Of a stretch of 64,000 nucleotides of DNA, positions 40,049-47,832 are shown one piece after another. The stretch's first letter is position 1, and each line of letters begins with the position of its first letter. The translations under genes and the position numbers were made by a program. The notes under the pieces are model-generated. The model saw only the letters and a list, made by a program, of their open reading frames with translations. It ran no database searches and was not told the origin of the DNA. Source of the DNA: Prasinococcaceae sp. CCMP 1430 (lineage: Eukaryota > Plantae > Prasinodermophyta); the NCBI GenBank assembly GCA_013416795.1, contig RQSC01000027.1:62001-126000 (forward strand), in the 5' to 3' direction.

Positions 40049-40999
40049 TCATGTACCATCAGATGGTTCCATCGGGATGGTACGTGTGCGTTTGGCGTGG
40101 GCTGGCGAGCTCGCAGGCCGAGCGCGCTCCAGGGGCGGGTGCGCTGGCGAGGCGGCCTCCTCCGCGTGCGCGACCAGCAGCACGAGGGTGTCGTCGAAGC
40201 GCACGACGCCGCTAGCCTCGCCGCCGGCGCCCTCGACGGCCTCGGCGACGCCCGCCTCAAGCGCCGCGTCGTCGAAATGCTCGCGCGAGAGCGTGCTCCA
40301 GAAGCGCGACCGCAGTAGTTCGCCCCACTCGGCGGCAGGCATGGTGACAGCGTAGGCCGCCTCAAACTCGTCAACGCGCGGTGTGCCATGCGCACCGCGA
40401 AGCGACTGAGCCCACGCGTGCGCATCGGGCTGCTGCCGGCGCCACACGCGTTTGGCTGCCTCAAAGAGAGCAACTGTTGGCTCGTGCGGCCGCGTGACGA
40501 CGACGAGGCGCCCGCCGATGCGCAGCCCTGAGACGAGATTACGGAGTGCCTCATCTGCTGCCACGCCATCGAGGTGGTGCATGATCTCTTTGAGCAGGAT
40601 GATGTCTGCCTTGTCGGCCTCACCTGCGGCGGCGATCTCGCGGCTGTAAGTGACAGCATCGGCCTTGACCGCATGCGCAAAGCCACCGACCAACGCGAGC
40701 ATGTCAGCGGAGCAGTCCACGACAGTTGGCTGCGCAATGATGCCCGCGTACTTGCACAGCGCGCGCGTGAAGTTCCCCGTGCCGCCGCCTACATCGACGA
40801 CGCGCAGCGTGCGCTGCGAGCGTGGCGCCACGTCTGCGGCCACGAGCCCGCATGCGCGTGCCACGACGCCCAGCTGCCACGTCTGATACTCGCTGCCGTC
40901 GGCGTAGAAGAAGGCGCGCTCGTACCCAGCGGCTGAAGCGCTATAGTGCCCACTATGCGAACGGCGCGCGCCCTCCTCCTCCAACTCGCAAACCCCCAT
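40049..40999 (-). CDS. Class I SAM-dependent methyltransferase, substrate unknown; start uncertain
   Basis: Motif I VVDVGGGTGNF, VVDCSADML, DIILLKEIMHHL, GGRLVVVTRP. Confidence 0.85.
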   Translation of the reverse strand: MGVCELEEEGARRSHSGHYSASAAGYERAFFYADGSEYQTWQLGVVARACGLVAADVAPRSQRTLRVVDVGGGTGNFTRALCKYAGIIAQPTVVDCSADMLALVGGFAHAVKADAVTYSREIAAAGEADKADIILLKEIMHHLDGVAADEALRNLVSGLRIGGRLVVVTRPHEPTVALFEAAKRVWRRQQPDAHAWAQSLRGAHGTPRVDEFEAAYAVTMPAAEWGELLRSRFWSTLSREHFDDAALEAGVAEAVEGAGGEASGVVRFDDTLVLLVAHAEEAASPAHPPLERARPASSPAHAKRTRTIPMEPSDGT

Positions 41000-41527
41000 T
41001 GCCGCGAGCAGCAGCAGCTCGCCGCCGCCGTGTCCGCCGCGCGCCGCAGCCCCAGGTGCCGCGAAGCTCTCGTCCCACACGCGACACCAGCCAGCGGCCA
41101 GCGCCGCTCCGGGCGGGGCGCACTCGGCGGCCTCGCCGATACCCAGCCCTGGGAGGCATGCGCCGTGCAGCGGAGCGCGCGCACACTGGCGCCGCGAGTC
41201 GCACTCGGCAGGCCCACCCTGCGGCGCCGCGCCAGCTGCGGCACCCGTTAAATGACATACTGACAACCGATATGGCTGCATGGTACAGCGCTGCAGTTGA
41301 TGAGGCTCCGAATCCACCTAAAATCCTGTGAGTGCACGTAGCAGGCGTCCGCTCCACGATGCAGCGTGGGCGCCATGGGCTTCGACTCGTCACTGACCTG
41401 CAGCCAGGCGCGTTCACTCCACGGCGACGACAACTCGTGGCGGCCGCTGCCGCAGTGGGCTACCTTCGATGCGGGCGGGTAGCCCCCGCTGTATTAATTG
41501 TGATGGATTAGACGCGCGGACCAGATA

Positions 41528-44500
41528 CTACTCCGCGGCGGTCGCTGAGGCGGCGTCTGCGGCGGCCTGCTTCCACTCGGCCCTCTCCTCACCAGAGAGC
41601 GCACGCCATCGCTCTCCGACGACCTTCATGACGTCTGAGGTCTTGCCATCGCCGCCAAGGCTCGAAGACTTGATCTCTGCAAAGTTGCTCTTGAGGAAGA
41701 ACGCGTATGCGTTCAGCGCGCGTTTGGCCTCGGGCTTGGCCTCACCCTGCGCGTCGCTCTCTGCGGCGCCACCGGCCGACGCGCCCGTCTCAGCCTCGTG
41801 CGCCGCATCGCGCATCGCCGCATATTCGGCCTTGTCGCCGTCGGAGAGCTCCTTCCACCTGGCAGCGATGAGTTTCATGCACTCGGGTGCGCTTGCGTCT
41901 GGGTTCTCACCCTTGACAGTAGGGTAGACCACTTTCACGAAGAAGCTATATGGCGTGGGCTTACGCTTGGAAGCATTCTTGGCTTTCTTGGCCTTCTTAG
42001 CCGAACCCTTCGCCGCCGCTTTCCCCGCCTGCCTCCGCGAGTATCTCGAGTGCCTCGCGCGCGTCAGCAGCTCAACTGCCTCGCTGTACTCCAGCCCAAG
42101 CGCCGCCTCCAGACCGCCGCCGTACTTCTGCATGAGCCCCTCGTCCTTGGTGATGCTCGTATAGCCAAGATTTTCGTTGCTCACATTGAAGCCTAGCTTG
42201 CTCGCCTTCACGATCATCTCACCTCCGACTTCAGGATGAATACCCACCACCCGCGGACACTGCAGCAGGCCCATCGCGCGCTGGAGCGTCATGGGTTCGT
42301 TCTGCAGCATATCCGGCACCGCACACGTCCAGCCCTTCTGCCCTGGGCGCTGCATGTTTTCGTGGCTCACGTACCAGCCGAAGCGCCCACGCCGCAGGAG
42401 CACCTTGTTGCCAGTCTCGGGGTGCTCGCCCAGCTCTCGAATGCTCGCACCCGCACCGAACATGTTGCCATCACCGTCGCCCTCGGCGTCATTCGGATAG
42501 AGGTCACGCACGTACGTGCAGTCTGGATAGTTTGTGCATCCGACGAACGCACCGCCGTATCGCGCCACCTTGACGGTAAGTTTTCCACCGCAGCCCTCCT
42601 CTGGGCAGCGGTCGTTGAGCTCGCCGGAGCTGCTATCGCGCTCGAAGATGACATCGGCGAGCTCATGTGTGAGCATGTCGTTGATCTGCGAGGTGCGCAC
42701 TTTTTCGACGCCCCCAAGAGCCTCTGTAATCTCCGCTTGAAAAGCCTTCATGACGTCCTCCCACTCAATGCTGCCGGTGGTGATCTCGTCGAGCCGGTTC
42801 TCCATGTCGGCGGTGAAGCTGTAGTCGACCAACTTGGGGAAGTACTTGGAAAAGAAGAGCGTGAGCACACGGCCCTGCGCGGATGGCACGAGCGTCTTAC
42901 CCGACTTCTCAACGTACGCGCGCGCCGCGAGGGTGGCGATCACGCTCGCGTACGTCGACGGGCGTCCGATCCCCATCTCATCTAGCGCCTTGACGAGGCT
43001 GCCCTCATTGAAGCGAGGCGGTGGGCGCGTAAAGTGTTGCGTGGCGTCGGGGCCTGATGCGATGGACACAATGTCACCCTCTGCGAGCGGCGGCAGGAAG
43101 CGCTCGCCGCGCCCGAGCCCATCGCCTCCATCACCGTTGTCGTCGTCGCCGTCGTCAGTCTCGCCCTCGCTGTCTGCGCCTTCCGAGGCGCGGCGTGCAT
43201 GCAGCGTGCGCATTGAGTCCACCGCTTGGAACCACCCAGGCTCGACCACAGTGGAGCCCGTCGCTCGCAGCGTGATGTCACGAGAGCCGTCCGCGGGCTC
43301 AAGCTCAGCGGCCGTACGGTTGAGTACGGCGTCTGCCATCTGGCTGGCCGTTGTGCGCTGCCAAATGAGCGTGTAAAGCGCGAATTGGTCCTGGTCGAGG
43401 TAGGCCAGCATGTCTCGCGAGGGTACGCGGCGCAGGTCCGTGGGGCGCACGCACTCGTGCGCCTCTTGCGCGTTCTTGGACTTTGACTTGTACACGCGCG
43501 CGTTTTCAGGCACGGCATCCTTGCCGAAGAGCTCTACGGCGCACTCACGCGCCGCCACCACCGCCTCGGGCGCCATGTTGACGCCGTCGGTACGCATGTA
43601 CGTGATGAGCCCGCCCACGGGTTCGCCGCTCGCGTCAGTAGCACCCTCGATACCCTGGTAGAGCTGCTGCGCGACCGCCATGGTGCGCTGGCCACCCCAC
43701 CGAAGCTTAGCCGCCGCATCCTGCTGCAAAGTGGACGTCACGTACGGCGCTGGCGGAGAGCGTCGCTGGCGGGATTGTGTGAGGCTCGACACGAGGAAGG
43801 GCGCGCAGCGGACGACGCGCTCGGACAGCGCGAAAGCCGCCTCCTCGTCGGCCACGCCCATCTTGCCCAGGCGATCGCCGTCTACCTTCCACACGGCCAC
43901 AGAAAATTCAGTGCCCGCCGGCGCACCCTCGCGTCGAACCTCCGCAGTGACCGTCCAGTACTCCTCGGGCACGAACGCATCGCGCGCGTCCTCGCGCTCG
44001 CAGATGAGCCGCAGCGCGGGCGACTGCACGCGCCCAGCGGACTTCGAGCCCGGCAGCCGGCTCCACAGCACGGGCGAGATGGAGAAGCCAAGCTTGTGAT
44101 CGAGCGCGCGCCGGGTGAAGTACGCCTCCACGAGTTCGTTATCCAGCGCGCGCGGCGCCTGGACGGCAGCGCGCACGGCATCGCGCGTCACCTCCGTGAA
44201 CGAGATGCGCGCGAAGCGCTCGCGAGGCACCGCAGCGCCGGCGCCTCCTGCGAGCGCGTCCTCGGTGCTCAGCGCCTCAACCAAGTGCCACGCGATGCCC
44301 TCGCCCTCCCTGTCCGGGTCTGTGGCCAGGAGCACGCGGGTCGCGGACAGCGCCTTCTCCCGCAGCGACCGCAGCACCTTTCCACGCCGGTCGTTGCCCT
44401 GGGCGTCGACGCCCCACTCGAGGCGCACAGCTTCACCGGGCGCACGGGCGCCGTCTGTGCGCACCTCGACGGCGGACGCTCTCGGCACCAGGTCACGTAC

Positions 44501-44770
44501 GTGGCCGTACGACGCCTCGACAACGTAGCCTGCGCCGAGGTACTTCTCGATAGTGCGCCCCTTGGCGGGCGACTCGACGATGACGAGCGTGTGAGTCCCG
44601 GCAGCGGCGGCAACGTTGCCGCGTGCGGCGGCAGCCGCTGCCCACCTTCGCGCGGCGACGCGGCGCCCTGCTGGCCGCCGTGCGGCGGCGGCGGCCGCCG
44701 CCGCACGCGCGCAGCGGGGCCCGTGAGCCATCGCGCCCATTGCCATAGCAGCGCTGGCGATGCCCACCAT
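41528..44770 (-). CDS. topA: Organelle-targeted bacterial-type DNA topoisomerase IA with two C-terminal HMG boxes, intronless
   Basis: Ala/Arg-rich N-terminal presequence; TOPRIM LVIVESPAK and ATDPDREGE; SAGRVQS; catalytic GLITYMRTD; GIGRPSTYA; C4 zinc ribbon CPEEGC...GCTNYPDC; C-terminal repeat LGEHPETG; HMG boxes KRKPTPYSFF...ARWKELSDGDKAEY and KRALNAYAFF...ERWRALSGEERAEW. Confidence 0.95.
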   Translation of the reverse strand: MVGIASAAMAMGAMAHGPRCARAAAAAAAARRPAGRRVAARRWAAAAAARGNVAAAAGTHTLVIVESPAKGRTIEKYLGAGYVVEASYGHVRDLVPRASAVEVRTDGARAPGEAVRLEWGVDAQGNDRRGKVLRSLREKALSATRVLLATDPDREGEGIAWHLVEALSTEDALAGGAGAAVPRERFARISFTEVTRDAVRAAVQAPRALDNELVEAYFTRRALDHKLGFSISPVLWSRLPGSKSAGRVQSPALRLICEREDARDAFVPEEYWTVTAEVRREGAPAGTEFSVAVWKVDGDRLGKMGVADEEAAFALSERVVRCAPFLVSSLTQSRQRRSPPAPYVTSTLQQDAAAKLRWGGQRTMAVAQQLYQGIEGATDASGEPVGGLITYMRTDGVNMAPEAVVAARECAVELFGKDAVPENARVYKSKSKNAQEAHECVRPTDLRRVPSRDMLAYLDQDQFALYTLIWQRTTASQMADAVLNRTAAELEPADGSRDITLRATGSTVVEPGWFQAVDSMRTLHARRASEGADSEGETDDGDDDNGDGGDGLGRGERFLPPLAEGDIVSIASGPDATQHFTRPPPRFNEGSLVKALDEMGIGRPSTYASVIATLAARAYVEKSGKTLVPSAQGRVLTLFFSKYFPKLVDYSFTADMENRLDEITTGSIEWEDVMKAFQAEITEALGGVEKVRTSQINDMLTHELADVIFERDSSSGELNDRCPEEGCGGKLTVKVARYGGAFVGCTNYPDCTYVRDLYPNDAEGDGDGNMFGAGASIRELGEHPETGNKVLLRRGRFGWYVSHENMQRPGQKGWTCAVPDMLQNEPMTLQRAMGLLQCPRVVGIHPEVGGEMIVKASKLGFNVSNENLGYTSITKDEGLMQKYGGGLEAALGLEYSEAVELLTRARHSRYSRRQAGKAAAKGSAKKAKKAKNASKRKPTPYSFFVKVVYPTVKGENPDASAPECMKLIAARWKELSDGDKAEYAAMRDAAHEAETGASAGGAAESDAQGEAKPEAKRALNAYAFFLKSNFAEIKSSSLGGDGKTSDVMKVVGERWRALSGEERAEWKQAAADAASATAAE

Positions 44771-44945
44771 CCGAGGGAGCTCTCCCCGCCTACCCCACCC
44801 CACCCAACCGTCCGCCTACGCCCCCTCTCCAGTCCACCCCACCCCACCCCACGCGCTGGCCAGAGTCCGCCGCACGCGCGCGAGCGCGCGCTGGGCACCG
44901 CCGCGCCGGGGGCGGAGCCAGGCGCGGCGGCGGGCCGGAGGATGC

Positions 44946-45436
44946 GGTGAGCTGGTGCTTGAGCAGGCAGTCCCCCCGGACCCCTCAACCGCCCACCCCC
45001 CCGGGCCACACGTGCCAGCTCGCGCTCGCGCGCGCGGTGTGGCGCCGGGATCTGCATGGGCTTCCCGAAGCAAGCGCAGGACGCGGCGGCCACCGCCGCT
45101 AGCGCGGCGGGCACTGGATCTCAGGGCGACGGGGACGGCGCCCGTGTGAATGTGTGCCCGCGCTGCCGCACGCACGCGGCCGAGCTCCCGGCCATCTGCG
45201 CGACGTGCGACCTCACGCTGGCGTCGAGCTTGCAGATGGCTCGCTCGTACCACCACCTGTTTCCTCTCCCGCGCTCAGTGCTCGCGGACGCTGGATCCGT
45301 GGCGGCGGGCGCAGCGTGTGGCGCATGCGGCAGCACCTTTGTGCTCGGCGGAAACAGCGACCGCAGCGCGGCAACCACAACCAGCAGCAGTGCGGGCGAG
45401 GTCGTGCTACGGCGACCGTGCTGCGGCACACTCCTG
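44946..45436 (+). pseudogene. GTF2H2: C-terminal fragment of TFIIH p44/SSL1 lacking the vWA domain, frame-disrupted, ending at an N
   Basis: [10 protein letters not shown] (one frame), then ICMGFPKQ...[39 protein letters not shown] (another frame; diagnostic p44 motif)...CGAC. The sequence after N45437 is unrelated. Confidence 0.7.
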
Positions 45437-45966
45437 NCTCCCCCCCCGTGCCCCGCGCGGCGCGATCCGCTCTCCGTCCGCGCGCGCGATGCGCTGACTC
45501 AGCAGCCTCCACGCATCCATGCATCTGATGGTACATGGGCAGCGAGGAGCACCCCGGGGCAGTACCGCCGCACCCCGCGCATTTTCGGACTATTTCATTT
45601 TTCCCGGGAATCAGCCCCTGAATTTTCTCACTTGCACATGTGCACTTTACAGTAGCTAGACTCGTCTACTAGTGTCCGGGTCAAAATGTGACGTGTCGCA
45701 ATTTTTGGTCGGCGGCTACATCCAGCTCGCTGCGATCCAGCCGCCGCCGAGGGGCGTTTCGGGGCCCTCTCGCCCATCTCCATATGGAACTTAGCGCGAT
45801 TCCGCCCCTCGCGGGGGGAAGGGGGCGCGCTCGCCGATGGTGGTTTACGTTGATTTTGACCATGTCACAGCGCGGCCACCCGGACACGCATGCGTTTTGA
45901 TGACGGGGGCCGACGCGGGGCGCGTTGGAGTTGGGCGCGCGCTGTGGCTGTGGGTCACATGGGCGG

Positions 45967-47832
45967 ATGAGGGTTGGGTGCGCGCCGCGCGCGCGTGGCG
46001 GGCGCGCGGGCGCGCGCTCGCCGCGCCGGACCCCTCCGGCGCGGGTGACGCCGCGCGCGCCGCCGCCGTCGCCCGACATGGAGGAGCTGGCCGCGACGCA
46101 CCTCAGCATGCTCACGTCAGTGCTGGAGGGAGACCCCACGTCGCTGAAGTGCTACGTTCGCGCGGCAGTCAGCGCGCCCGATGCCAGCGCGCCGGTTGAG
46201 GTGCTGCGCTTGCAGCTCGTCGCCGAGACCAAGGGCACGACTGCCACCGTCGTGCGCGCCCAGGGCCAGGGCGCGACGCTTGACCTGAGCTCGCTGGCGC
46301 ACTCCACGTCGCCTGAGGACGCCTCAGCGGCCGTCGAGGAGTCTTTGGTGTCGCAGCAGGCGGTTGAGCTGCCCTCGGCTGCCCTGGTGGTCCCGCTTGC
46401 GGCTGAGGCGCCCGGCGGAGGGCTGGCGCTGGTCGGGCTGCTGGTCGCCGAGCGCCCTGGCTGGGCGGCGGAGCGGGCGGCAGCCGGTGGCAGCGCGGCG
46501 GCAGGTCGCCGCGGCACGTTCTCCGCGGAGGAGCGAGCCTCGCTGGGCGCTCACGCACGCGCGCTCGCTATCGCCGCCAAGATGGAGCTCGCGCGCATGA
46601 GCGCCGCCACCGCTCGCCGTGCGCTCGGCGGTGGGCTTTCGCAGGCCCGTGGGCAGCTGCGCGCCATCCGCACCCTGAGCTCACTCATAGGCCAGCAGAG
46701 CGCCGAGGGGGGAATCGTGTTCGACTTGTCCTCCGACATCGAACGCCAGACAGGACAGCTGTCGGACGTGGTTGACGCGCTCGAGGCCGCTCTCCACCCC
46801 GCTGAAAGGCACGCTGCGCACGCGCATGAAGGCCCACCCATGCTTGTCGCCGAGCCGGCGGGTGCACGCAACGCGGGCAGCAAAAGCCTGCCCCCACCGG
46901 CGGAGCAGTCGCAGCCAGAGGCGTTGCCAACAGCTTCTGTTGCAGAGGGTCTCGAGCCTCTCGCTGCCATGGCGATAGACGCGGGCGCGCGCGAGGACGC
47001 GCGCGACACTGTGAACGACGGCGACGGTGACGCAGCGGGCGACGACGAGAGCTCCACCAGCACGGGCAGCAGCAAAAGCGCCGGCGTCCCGTCGCTCACG
47101 GTCGAGATTGACGACAGCGAGGGGGATGGAGACGGCGGCTTCCCTGCCTCCTCTTCAGGGGACGGCGCTTCGGTGGACGACTCTGAGACGCTTACGCGCG
47201 CGTCCAAGGCGGAGATTGATGACGAGCGCACGGAAGCGGAGTCGGGAGCGCAAGATGCTGAGGGCATGGGCACTGCGGAACAGTGCAACCTGTGCTCATT
47301 TCTTCCACAGCTGGGGGTGGCGGCCGAGGGCATGGCACGGGCGCAGGGTTTGGTACTCACCGCCTCGGTGCCCGACTCATTGCCCCCAGTTCGAGTACCC
47401 CTTGCAGCGGCGCGCGGCGCGGTGAATGCGGCCGTCGACGCGGCGCTGCGTGCCGCTGCCCCATCGTCCACGCTCGAGCTCGAGGCGAGGTTTGACGGCG
47501 GCGGCGATGCGGGCGACGGCGCAAGTGCAGCGAGTGGTGCTGGCGTCGCTGTGACGTTGCGCTACACGCAGGCAGGCGCGCGAGCGCATGCGGGCGGACA
47601 GGACGGCTACGGTATGCGCACCGCCGCCGCCTCCGTGGCCGCATTGGGTGGCTCGCTCACACACGAGTGTTGCTCGACCGGACTCGGGGGGGGGTCCTCT
47701 CTTTCGGTGTACGAGGAGGCGGTTGCGTCAACGGCCCCGGCGGCGAGCGCGCTCACGTCTTCGCACGAGGCTACCATCAATCTCCTCTTGCCGGCAGCGC
47801 ATTCTCATTGGGCTTACGAGGAGGTGCGATAA
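45967..47832 (+). CDS. CSK: Chloroplast sensor kinase (Hik2/CSK) homolog: GAF plus modified histidine-kinase domains
   Basis: Collinear with plant CSK as recalled: LKCYVRAA; AVEESLVSQQAVEL; VGLLVAERP; FSAEERASLGAHARALAIAAKME; LSQARGQLRAIRTLSSL; DLSSDIERQTGQL. Transit-peptide-like region from ATG 45967. Confidence 0.8.
   Translation: MRVGCAPRARGGRAGARSPRRTPPARVTPRAPPPSPDMEELAATHLSMLTSVLEGDPTSLKCYVRAAVSAPDASAPVEVLRLQLVAETKGTTATVVRAQGQGATLDLSSLAHSTSPEDASAAVEESLVSQQAVELPSAALVVPLAAEAPGGGLALVGLLVAERPGWAAERAAAGGSAAAGRRGTFSAEERASLGAHARALAIAAKMELARMSAATARRALGGGLSQARGQLRAIRTLSSLIGQQSAEGGIVFDLSSDIERQTGQLSDVVDALEAALHPAERHAAHAHEGPPMLVAEPAGARNAGSKSLPPPAEQSQPEALPTASVAEGLEPLAAMAIDAGAREDARDTVNDGDGDAAGDDESSTSTGSSKSAGVPSLTVEIDDSEGDGDGGFPASSSGDGASVDDSETLTRASKAEIDDERTEAESGAQDAEGMGTAEQCNLCSFLPQLGVAAEGMARAQGLVLTASVPDSLPPVRVPLAAARGAVNAAVDAALRAAAPSSTLELEARFDGGGDAGDGASAASGAGVAVTLRYTQAGARAHAGGQDGYGMRTAAASVAALGGSLTHECCSTGLGGGSSLSVYEEAVASTAPAASALTSSHEATINLLLPAAHSHWAYEEVR

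What the first reader, a model, noticed from the sequence alone, without database searches (positions are those of the whole stretch)
41528..44770. Bacterial-type topoisomerase IA fused to two HMG boxes: a possible one-polypeptide organellar nucleoid packaging and relaxing machine
Seen: one uninterrupted ORF with a presequence-like N-terminus, a complete TopA core, a zinc ribbon, then two HMG-box motifs at about 41800-41975 and 41550-41735, preceded by a Lys-rich linker (AAKGSAKKAKKAK). Established: tandem HMG boxes are the architecture of mitochondrial nucleoid compactors (TFAM/Abf2), and HMG proteins also occur in algal plastid nucleoids. Plant organellar TopIA and most bacterial TopA end in zinc ribbons or basic tails, and some carry SWIB. 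The core looks alphaproteobacterial (LWSRLPGSKSAGRVQS, RYGGAFVGCTNYP). Inference: the fusion could couple DNA bending to supercoil relaxation in the mitochondrial or plastid nucleoid. I do not know of a described TopA-HMG2 fusion.
Basis: partly seen in the sequence, partly recalled or inferred. Interest (0 to 1): 0.85.

Follow-up and report, generated by a model that had tools for sequence, protein, structure and literature searches.

The report
Green-algal organellar topoisomerase with HMG tail
A marine green alga encodes a bacterial-type DNA-relaxing enzyme, of the kind sent to chloroplasts and mitochondria, that ends in two eukaryotic DNA-bending HMG boxes; the fusion is real and runs through the chlorophyte green algae sampled here, yet I found no paper describing it.

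Summary
Window 41528-44770 (-) is one uninterrupted 1080-codon gene. It has an Ala/Arg-rich N-terminal extension, a complete TopA core with all catalytic motifs, one C4 zinc ribbon, two Toprim_C_rpt domains, a Lys-rich linker and two HMG boxes. Pfam scores the boxes at 73.6 bits against a cut-off of 25.4, and AlphaFold gives block-mean pLDDT 91-98 over most of each.

The fusion is not unique to this genome. The protein sits in a well-supported clade of Viridiplantae bacterial-type TopA. Of 20 chlorophyte-branch rows, 13 have clear HMG boxes (one to three) and two have degenerate tails. These include Pedinophyceae sp. YPF-701 and Pleodorina starrii. The five without a box all end early. Streptophyte algae carry a SWIB domain at the same position, and the three named land plants scanned carry neither.

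My best reading is that this is the chlorophyte form of organellar TOP1 (type IA). The HMG tail most likely acts as a duplex-DNA anchor that brings the enzyme to bent or crossed nucleoid DNA. It is less likely to be a bulk packaging protein.

No searched paper describes the architecture, although such sequences sit in public databases as "DNA topoisomerase" or "hypothetical protein". Localisation, transcript structure and DNA binding were not testable here. The scan had not noted this feature before.

The parts
41528..44770 (-). Complete intronless CDS, 1080 codons from the first ATG plus the stop at 41528-41530: TopA fused to two HMG boxes
   Evidence: One ORF. Pfam and NCBIfam domains all lie in one frame. 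A 99%-identical TARA copy has no indel.
44594..44770 (-). N-terminal extension, residues 12-70. The first 60 residues hold 28 Ala and 9 Arg; residues 12-70 have net charge +9. It looks like a transit peptide or presequence.
   Evidence: Composition. Many of the hits start within a few residues of the Toprim domain, whereas named plant and algal relatives carry N-terminal extensions. Not tested with a targeting predictor.
44258..44590 (-). Toprim domain with the VESPAK glutamate (E77) and the DPDREGE acidic cluster (162-168)
   Evidence: Pfam PF01751, E 8.6e-17; motif positions.
42746..44146 (-). Topoisom_bac core (domains II-IV). The catalytic tyrosine Y402 lies in ITYMRTD at 43598-43600. SAGRVQS (255) and AQEAHE (445) are also present.
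   Evidence: Pfam PF01131, E 1.2e-101. Aligned to M. smegmatis TopA 6PCM at E 2.5e-109. Motifs.
43106..43207 (-). Asp/Gly-rich acidic insertion in the core, residues 533-566, net charge -8
   Evidence: It falls in a gapped, poorly matched stretch of the 6PCM alignment.
42497..42607 (-). Single C4 zinc ribbon, with all four cysteines present
   Evidence: Pfam PF01396, 47.2 bits against a cut-off of 32. Of its four cysteines, three are invariant and one is conserved in at least 90% of the 22 aligned relatives.
42263..42439 (-). Toprim_C_rpt domain 1, residues 789-847
   Evidence: Pfam PF13368, 27.3 bits. The AlphaFold model shows beta strands followed by a helix at high pLDDT. Foldseek matches the C-terminal domains of M. 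smegmatis TopA 6PCM at E 3.4e-7.
42095..42253 (-). Toprim_C_rpt domain 2, residues 851-903. Pfam reported only one matched stretch (794-851), so this second copy is not a Pfam hit in this protein.
   Evidence: The model shows four strands followed by helices at pLDDT about 95. The region aligns with the second repeat of relatives, in which Pfam scores two repeats.
41969..42061 (-). Lys/Arg-rich linker, residues 915-945, net charge +12
   Evidence: Predicted partly helical, then disordered.
41777..41968 (-). HMG box 1, residues 946-1009, three helices
   Evidence: Pfam PF00505. Block-mean pLDDT 95-98. The best solved-structure match is the first HMG box of human TFAM, E 7e-11.
41729..41776 (-). 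Flexible acidic Ala/Gly linker between the boxes, residues 1010-1025
   Evidence: pLDDT is below 50 over residues 1012-1024. Both non-synonymous differences from the TARA copy within the linker-plus-HMG segment fall here.
41531..41728 (-). HMG box 2, residues 1026-1091, three helices, at the extreme C-terminus
   Evidence: Pfam PF00505 and PF09011. Block-mean pLDDT 91-97 over most of the box, falling to 85 in the last ten residues. The best solved-structure match is HMGB1, aligning to its first HMG box.

Best explanation
This is the chlorophyte version of the nuclear-encoded, organelle-targeted bacterial-type topoisomerase I (type IA TOP1).

Shown here:
- It is one polypeptide with an intact TopA catalytic core.
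- It has one zinc ribbon and two Toprim_C_rpt domains. In mycobacterial TopA these domains bind single-stranded DNA.
- It has a strongly basic linker and two confidently folded, architectural-type HMG boxes.
- The same tail, with one to three boxes, is found across the chlorophyte branch sampled.

Inferred:
- The Ala/Arg-rich N-terminus imports the enzyme into the plastid and/or mitochondrion.
- There the core relaxes negative supercoils by the usual mechanism, a 5'-phosphotyrosine link and passage of a single strand.
- The basic linker and HMG boxes hold on to duplex DNA through the minor groove. They would prefer bent, crossed or underwound DNA.
- This would tether the enzyme to the nucleoid and raise its local concentration and processivity at sites of torsional stress.
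- The tail would then play the part of the lysine-rich tail of mycobacterial TopA. The SWIB domain that streptophyte algae carry at the same position may be a counterpart.
For: Domains and motifs.

Fold of the C-terminal 392 residues: mean pLDDT 84.7, with three helices per box at block means mostly 91-98. Foldseek matches 6PCM for the Toprim_C_rpt part. It matches tandem-HMG proteins (HMGB1, Abf2p, TFAM) for the tail, and single boxes superpose at rmsd 1.4-2.1 A. The best sequence matches of the boxes are TFAM, HMGB1, SSRP1 and NHP6A, all architectural.

Conservation:
- 12 of the 13 rows labelled HMG-bearing in the tree fall in one Viridiplantae clade (SH-aLRT 98).
- A family-specific HMM finds an HMG or HMG-like tail in 15 of 20 chlorophyte-branch rows and in none of the rows outside the Viridiplantae clade apart from P0122.
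- The five rows without a box all end early.
- Named members are Pedinophyceae sp. YPF-701 and Pleodorina starrii.
- SWIB occupies the same position in Spirogloea and Chlorokybus.

Organelle: AtTOP1 type IA was GFP-localised to both chloroplasts and mitochondria, and the C. merolae enzyme to the plastid (PMC4166229). The N-terminal extension has no acidic residue.

Coding continuity: GC3 is uniform, and the TARA copy differs at 14 synonymous and 10 non-synonymous codons with no indel.
Against: - No localisation, transcript or biochemical evidence exists for this protein or any TopA-HMG protein.
- The HMG boxes themselves are nearly neutral (net charge 0 and +1), so much of the electrostatic binding may come from the linker.
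- HMG boxes and Lys-rich stretches are typical of nuclear proteins.
- The tail varies a lot between lineages in box number, position and sequence, which could mean weak constraint on a precise function.
Confidence: 0.6

Rival explanations
1. The tandem HMG tail makes the enzyme a bulk nucleoid-packaging protein, like TFAM, Abf2 or HBD1, so that one polypeptide both compacts and relaxes organellar DNA.
For: The tandem 2xHMG layout matches TFAM, Abf2p and HMGB1 structurally. Box 1 is closest to TFAM in sequence. A 2xHMG protein, HBD1, compacts chloroplast nucleoids in Chlamydomonas (PMC8157925).
Against: Compaction by TFAM-like proteins depends on very high copy number, which is unusual for a 1080-residue topoisomerase (my inference, not measured). 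Box number varies from one to three among orthologues, and one lineage has a box inserted between the Toprim_C_rpt domains. That fits an accessory DNA anchor better than a fixed U-turn device. The linker between the boxes is short, acidic and predicted disordered, unlike the helical linker of TFAM (my recollection).
Confidence: 0.15
2. The protein acts in the nucleus. The HMG boxes and the Lys-rich stretch would serve as chromatin-binding and nuclear-import elements, and the N-terminal extension would not be a targeting peptide.
For: HMG boxes are mostly nuclear. The linker resembles a classical basic nuclear localisation signal.
Against: The protein is orthologous to plant TOP1 type IA, which localises to plastids and mitochondria. 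The first 60 residues are Ala/Arg-rich with no acidic residue. Eukaryotic nuclear type IA enzymes are Top3 alpha and beta, a different subfamily, and the topB/Topo III models score far lower here (135-168 bits against 600 for topA_bact). HMG-box proteins do work in organelles (PMC8157925).
Confidence: 0.1
3. The long ORF is read as two products. Transcripts or internal initiation would give TopA without the tail and/or a free 2xHMG protein, so the fusion would be partly an annotation artefact.
For: No transcript evidence could be examined. GC-rich DNA gives long chance ORFs.
Against: There is no stop between the domains in this genome, the TARA copy, or at least 12 other 50%-identity clusters, including long genomic contigs. 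A Trinity transcript from another eukaryote (P0122) carries TopA and an HMG box on one mRNA. Codon-position GC is uniform across the junction.
Confidence: 0.07

Closest known systems
Plant and algal organellar topoisomerase I type IA (AtTOP1, At4g31210; Chlamydomonas Cre10.g442850 as listed in PMC4166229)
   Same: Same bacterial-type TopA core, zinc ribbon and two Toprim_C_rpt domains, with an N-terminal extension. They fall in one Viridiplantae clade (SH-aLRT 98). PMC4166229 reports an alphaproteobacterial origin for green plants.
   Different: The fern, gymnosperm and angiosperm members scanned have no HMG or SWIB hit. The gymnosperm and angiosperm members have N-terminal extensions of about 370-430 residues, the fern about 110. 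The HMG tail is not mentioned in that review or in the 2024 type IA review PMC10969213.
TopA-SWIB fusion (Chlamydia TopA, NCBIfam PRK06319) and the streptophyte-algal TopA-SWIB found here
   Same: A bacterial-type TopA that ends in a eukaryotic chromatin-type domain placed after the Toprim_C_rpt domains. PMC4758235 notes the Chlamydia fusion.
   Different: The added domain is SWIB, not HMG. The window protein has no SWIB hit.
Mycobacterial TopA (M. smegmatis 6PCM, M. tuberculosis 5D5H/5UJ1)
   Same: The best solved-structure match for the core and the Toprim_C_rpt domains. Its C-terminal domains bind single-stranded DNA. From memory, it ends in a basic tail.
   Different: It has no zinc ribbon and no HMG boxes, and it is bacterial and cytoplasmic.
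Tandem-HMG nucleoid proteins: TFAM, Abf2p, Chlamydomonas HBD1
   Same: Two architectural HMG boxes in tandem. These are the best structural and sequence matches of the tail. They act on organellar DNA (PMC8157925).
   Different: Those are small, free-standing proteins. Here the boxes are the tail of an enzyme. No free-standing close relative of the tail was found.

Membership tests
Bacterial-type topoisomerase IA (TopA, TIGR01051) | Full-length match to the family profile above the curated cut-off | tested here: met
   TIGR01051 scores 600.3 bits against a cut-off of 456.4, over profile positions 1-630 of 632.
Bacterial-type topoisomerase IA (TopA, TIGR01051) | Catalytic tyrosine and Toprim acidic residues | tested here: met
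   Y402 in ITYMRTD, E77 in VESPAK and the DPDREGE cluster at 162-168 are present. They align with the same motifs in 6PCM.
Bacterial-type topoisomerase IA (TopA, TIGR01051) | Relaxation of negative supercoils | not testable with these tools
   Needs an enzyme assay.
HMG-box domain (PF00505) | Profile match above the gathering score | tested here: met
   73.6 bits against 25.4, in two stretches.
HMG-box domain (PF00505) | Three-helix HMG-box fold | tested here: met
   Three helices per box, block-mean pLDDT mostly 91-98. Single-box superpositions have rmsd 1.4-2.1 A on BAF57, HMG-D and Sox.
HMG-box domain (PF00505) | Minor-groove DNA binding and bending | not testable with these tools
   Needs gel-shift, circularisation or FRET assays.
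Viridiplantae organellar TOP1 (type IA) | Phylogenetic placement with the plant and algal enzymes | tested here: met
   It lies in a 30-row clade with Adiantum, Welwitschia, Cinchona, Spirogloea, Mesostigma, Pedinophyceae and Pleodorina (SH-aLRT 98, quick LG+G4 tree). Chlorokybus fell just outside this clade in an unresolved position.
Viridiplantae organellar TOP1 (type IA) | N-terminal targeting peptide and organellar localisation | tested here: inconclusive
   A 59-residue Ala/Arg-rich extension with no acidic residue fits a targeting peptide. No targeting predictor or localisation data were available.
TFAM/Abf2/HBD1-type nucleoid packaging proteins | Two tandem HMG boxes | tested here: met
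TFAM/Abf2/HBD1-type nucleoid packaging proteins | Small free-standing architectural protein | tested here: not met
   The boxes are the last 146 residues of a 1080-residue enzyme.
TopA-SWIB fusion (PRK06319) | C-terminal SWIB/MDM2 domain | tested here: not met
   No SWIB hit in the window protein. PRK06319 scores 440.6 bits against a cut-off of 868.

The most novel reading that the evidence does not exclude
Green-lineage organellar TopA may have served as a platform that repeatedly captured eukaryotic chromatin modules. The evidence is an HMG tail in chlorophytes (one to three boxes, once inserted between the Toprim_C_rpt domains), SWIB in streptophyte algae, neither in the land plants scanned, and an apparently independent single HMG box on a TopA that branches outside the plant clade in another eukaryote (P0122). 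On this reading the HMG tail is a true functional coupling of DNA-shape recognition to strand passage. It would steer the enzyme to crossovers and bends and contribute to nucleoid architecture. That would make TopA-HMG a second class of organellar HMG protein in green algae, beside HBD1.
Probability: 0.3. Interest if true: 0.65.

Novelty: new variant of a known kind. Interest (0 to 1): 0.5.

Why it matters
Type IA topoisomerases are known for variable C-terminal DNA-binding domains. An HMG-box tail appears in none of the papers I could search, including a 2024 review of type IA enzymes across the tree of life and a 2014 review of organellar replication enzymes. HMG-box proteins were reported in chloroplast nucleoids only in 2021 (HBD1).

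A TopA-HMG enzyme conserved across the Chlorophyta gives a concrete, testable link between nucleoid architecture and supercoil control in organelles. The swap between HMG in chlorophytes and SWIB in streptophyte algae at the same position is a tidy case of eukaryotic chromatin domains being grafted onto an endosymbiont-derived enzyme. If the Chlamydomonas orthologue has the tail, the question can be studied genetically.

Tried and rejected
- The tail alone (residues 915-1091) searched against 5.8 billion proteins found no free-standing relative. This search depends on shared words, so the blank is weak.
- Six literature searches and one gene-id search found no description of a TopA-HMG fusion.
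- The supplement of the HBD1 paper, which lists 2xHMG proteins of Micromonas and Ostreococcus, is not held. I could not see whether the authors met this fusion.
- I looked for transcript-like contigs. L003 and L004 (P0061) turned out to be genomic, with no poly-A tract within about 500 bases of the stop and further ORFs called downstream. There is therefore no direct mRNA evidence for a chlorophyte member.
- The idea that the fusion is unique to this genome is rejected.
- The idea that rows lacking an HMG hit represent loss is rejected. They either end early or carry degenerate boxes.
- Pfam found nothing in the upstream ORF 45056-45400 (+) or in ORF 45925-47832 (+).
Full report
**What is there**

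The region holds one uninterrupted ORF on the minus strand, 41528..44803, 1091 aa from a GTG. All residue numbers below count from that GTG. The eukaryotic CDS is therefore 41528-44770 (-), 1080 codons plus the stop.

Pfam finds these domains:
- Toprim, residues 72-182.
- Topoisom_bac, 220-686, E 1.2e-101.
- Zn_ribbon_Top1, 733-769, 47 bits against a cut-off of 32.
- Toprim_C_rpt, 794-851.
- HMG_box, two stretches at 946-1001 and 1026-1081, 73.6 bits against a cut-off of 25.4.

NCBIfam TIGR01051 (topA_bact) matches end to end at 600 bits against a cut-off of 456.

The catalytic motifs are intact:
- E77 in VESPAK.
- The DPDREGE cluster at 162-168.
- SAGRVQS at 255.
- The active-site tyrosine Y402 in ITYMRTD.
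- AQEAHE at 445.
- All four cysteines of the zinc ribbon.

The N-terminal 59 residues after the ATG are Ala/Arg-rich (28 Ala and 9 Arg in the first 60), have no acidic residue and carry net charge +9. The linker before the HMG boxes (915-945) has net charge +12.

**Is it one coding unit?**

GC at the third codon position is 0.75-0.82 in every segment, including both HMG boxes, and GC2 is lower than GC3 throughout.

A TARA Oceans metagenome scaffold (L001) carries a 99%-identical copy, followed by the same methyltransferase gene. Across 1072 codons the two copies differ at 14 synonymous and 10 non-synonymous codons, with no indel or stop. Within the linker-plus-HMG segment, the two non-synonymous differences lie in the stretch between the boxes, not in the boxes.

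No transcript data could be examined, so the single-mRNA status of this gene remains inferred.

**Fold of the C-terminal part**

I ran AlphaFold2 on residues 700-1091 with a 22-row alignment of relatives. Mean pLDDT was 84.7. Add 699 to model numbering to get protein numbering.

The model shows:
- A zinc ribbon.
- Two beta-strand-plus-helix domains, at protein residues about 789-847 and 851-903. These are the two Toprim_C_rpt units. Pfam reported only one matched stretch here (794-851).
- A long basic helix.
- Two three-helix boxes, at 951-1009 and 1032-1090. Block-mean pLDDT is 95-98 for box 1 and 91-97 for most of box 2, falling to 85 in the last ten residues.
- A disordered stretch between the boxes (pLDDT below 50).

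Foldseek against the PDB matches the first part to the C-terminal domains of M. smegmatis TopA bound to ssDNA (6PCM, E 3.4e-7). It matches the tail to tandem-HMG proteins (HMGB1 A-B, Abf2p, TFAM). Single boxes superpose at rmsd 1.4-2.1 A.

By sequence, box 1 is closest to the first HMG box of human TFAM (E 7e-11). Box 2 is closest to HMGB1, aligning to its first HMG box, followed by SSRP1, NHP6A and HMG-D. All of these are architectural, non-sequence-specific proteins.

**How widespread is it?**

A full scan of 1.84 billion cluster representatives shows the protein is rather isolated. Apart from its own TARA twin, the next hit is 43% identical.

The best named hits are Viridiplantae: Spirogloea, Adiantum, Chlorokybus, Myrmecia, Mesostigma, Welwitschia and Cinchona. 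A tree of the core (96 rows, 573 columns, quick LG+G4) puts the window in a 30-row Viridiplantae clade with SH-aLRT 98. Chlorokybus fell just outside this clade in an unresolved position.

HMG boxes were detected in two ways: Pfam and an HMM built from the family's own boxes. The results:
- 13 of 20 chlorophyte-branch rows have clear HMG boxes, numbering one to three.
- P0033 has a short but significant HMG-like tail (E 6e-6).
- P0041 has a weaker HMG-like tail (E 0.002).
- The five rows without a box (P0051, P0034, P0059, P0107, P0064) all end early. P0059 stops a few residues into what aligns as the start of a box.
- Among the tree's rows outside the Viridiplantae clade, none was hit apart from P0122.

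Named carriers are Pedinophyceae sp. YPF-701 (CAG9464497.1, two boxes) and Pleodorina starrii (GLC63308.1 / UniRef A0A9W6BT26, two boxes). They are annotated only as "unnamed protein product", "hypothetical protein" or "DNA topoisomerase".

The tail therefore looks like an old and widespread feature of chlorophyte organellar TopA, not a peculiarity of this genome.

**Comparative pattern**

- Streptophyte algae carry a SWIB/MDM2 domain at the position where chlorophytes have HMG boxes: Spirogloea, Chlorokybus and the unnamed P0058.
- The fern, gymnosperm and angiosperm members scanned have no HMG or SWIB hit. The gymnosperm and angiosperm members have N-terminal extensions of about 370-430 residues, the fern about 110.
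- In the window's nearest clade, P0097, P0194 and P0080 have an HMG box inserted between the two Toprim_C_rpt domains.
- A Trinity transcript in EukProt (P0122) combines TopA with one HMG box. It branches outside the plant clade, and the relatives of its C-terminal region include cyanobacteria. This is probably an independent fusion.

**What is known**

- PMC4166229 states that plant organelles contain a TopA homologue. AtTOP1 (At4g31210) was GFP-localised to both chloroplasts and mitochondria, and the C. merolae enzyme to the plastid. It lists Cre10.g442850 as the Chlamydomonas orthologue.
- Neither that review nor the 2024 review of type IA enzymes across the tree of life (PMC10969213) mentions HMG or SWIB tails in algae.
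- PMC8157925 reports HBD1, a free-standing 2xHMG protein, as the first HMG-box protein of chloroplast nucleoids. It notes 2xHMG proteins in Micromonas and Ostreococcus without mentioning topoisomerase. Its supplement is not held.
- PMC4758235 recalls the Chlamydia TopA-SWIB fusion.
- Six text searches and one gene-id search found no description of TopA-HMG.

**Mechanism**

Shown:
- An intact type IA catalytic core.
- C-terminal domains of the kind that bind single-stranded DNA in mycobacterial TopA.
- A strongly basic linker.
- Two well-formed architectural HMG boxes on a flexible tether.
- Conservation of this tail type across the chlorophytes sampled.

Inferred:
- The N-terminus is a transit peptide or presequence.
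- The enzyme relaxes negative supercoils in plastid and/or mitochondrial nucleoids.
- The HMG tail binds duplex DNA in the minor groove. It would favour bent, crossed or underwound DNA, and so anchor the enzyme and raise its processivity where torsional stress builds up.

Compaction by TFAM-like proteins needs high copy number. Box number and position vary among orthologues. The linker between the boxes is short and disordered.

A nuclear role is unlikely given the orthology and the N-terminus. Split products are unlikely given conservation of the open frame in many lineages. Neither is excluded.

**Verdict**

The feature is real, and it is a conserved but apparently undescribed variant of a known enzyme class. 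It is of moderate interest. It is not unique, and the mechanism is plausible rather than surprising. It does offer a testable link between nucleoid architecture and topology in green-algal organelles, together with a neat HMG/SWIB domain-swap pattern.

The tree agrees with a chlorophyte placement. The scan had not recorded this feature before.

Noticed in passing
P0029 (Spirogloea muscicola), P0031 (Chlorokybus atmophyticus), P0058: Streptophyte-algal organellar TopA ends in a SWIB/MDM2 domain at the position where chlorophytes have HMG boxes. This is the same architecture as the Chlamydia TopA-SWIB fusion. The three named land-plant members scanned have neither domain.
   Followed up: partly
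L005:1423-4536 (P0097); also P0194 and P0080: In the clade nearest the window, an HMG box is inserted between the two Toprim_C_rpt domains. P0097 and P0194 have a second box at the C-terminus as well.
   Followed up: partly
P0122 (EukProt Trinity transcript, 986 aa): A TopA with one C-terminal HMG box on a single transcript. It branches outside the Viridiplantae clade, and the relatives of its C-terminal region include cyanobacteria (Moorena, Hormoscilla). This is probably an independent TopA-HMG fusion in another eukaryote whose identity was not shown.
   Followed up: partly
window 40049-41317 (-): The downstream neighbour is a SAM-dependent methyltransferase (Methyltransf_23/12/25/11). The same gene follows TopA on the 99%-identical TARA scaffold L001.
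   Followed up: partly
window 45056-45440 (+), N at 45437: A divergent upstream ORF has paired CxxC motifs followed by an SYHHLFP-like string. From memory it resembles the C-terminal zinc finger of TFIIH p44/Ssl1, but Pfam found nothing at E 0.01. A single ambiguous base (N) sits at 45437.
   Followed up: partly
window 43106-43207 (-): A 34-residue Asp/Gly-rich acidic insertion (net charge -8) lies in a gapped, poorly matched stretch of the TopA core. Its function is unknown.
   Followed up: no
window 45925-47832 (+): A 635-aa ORF rich in Ala, Gly and Ser with no Pfam match. It may be chance in GC-rich DNA or an unannotated gene.
   Followed up: no
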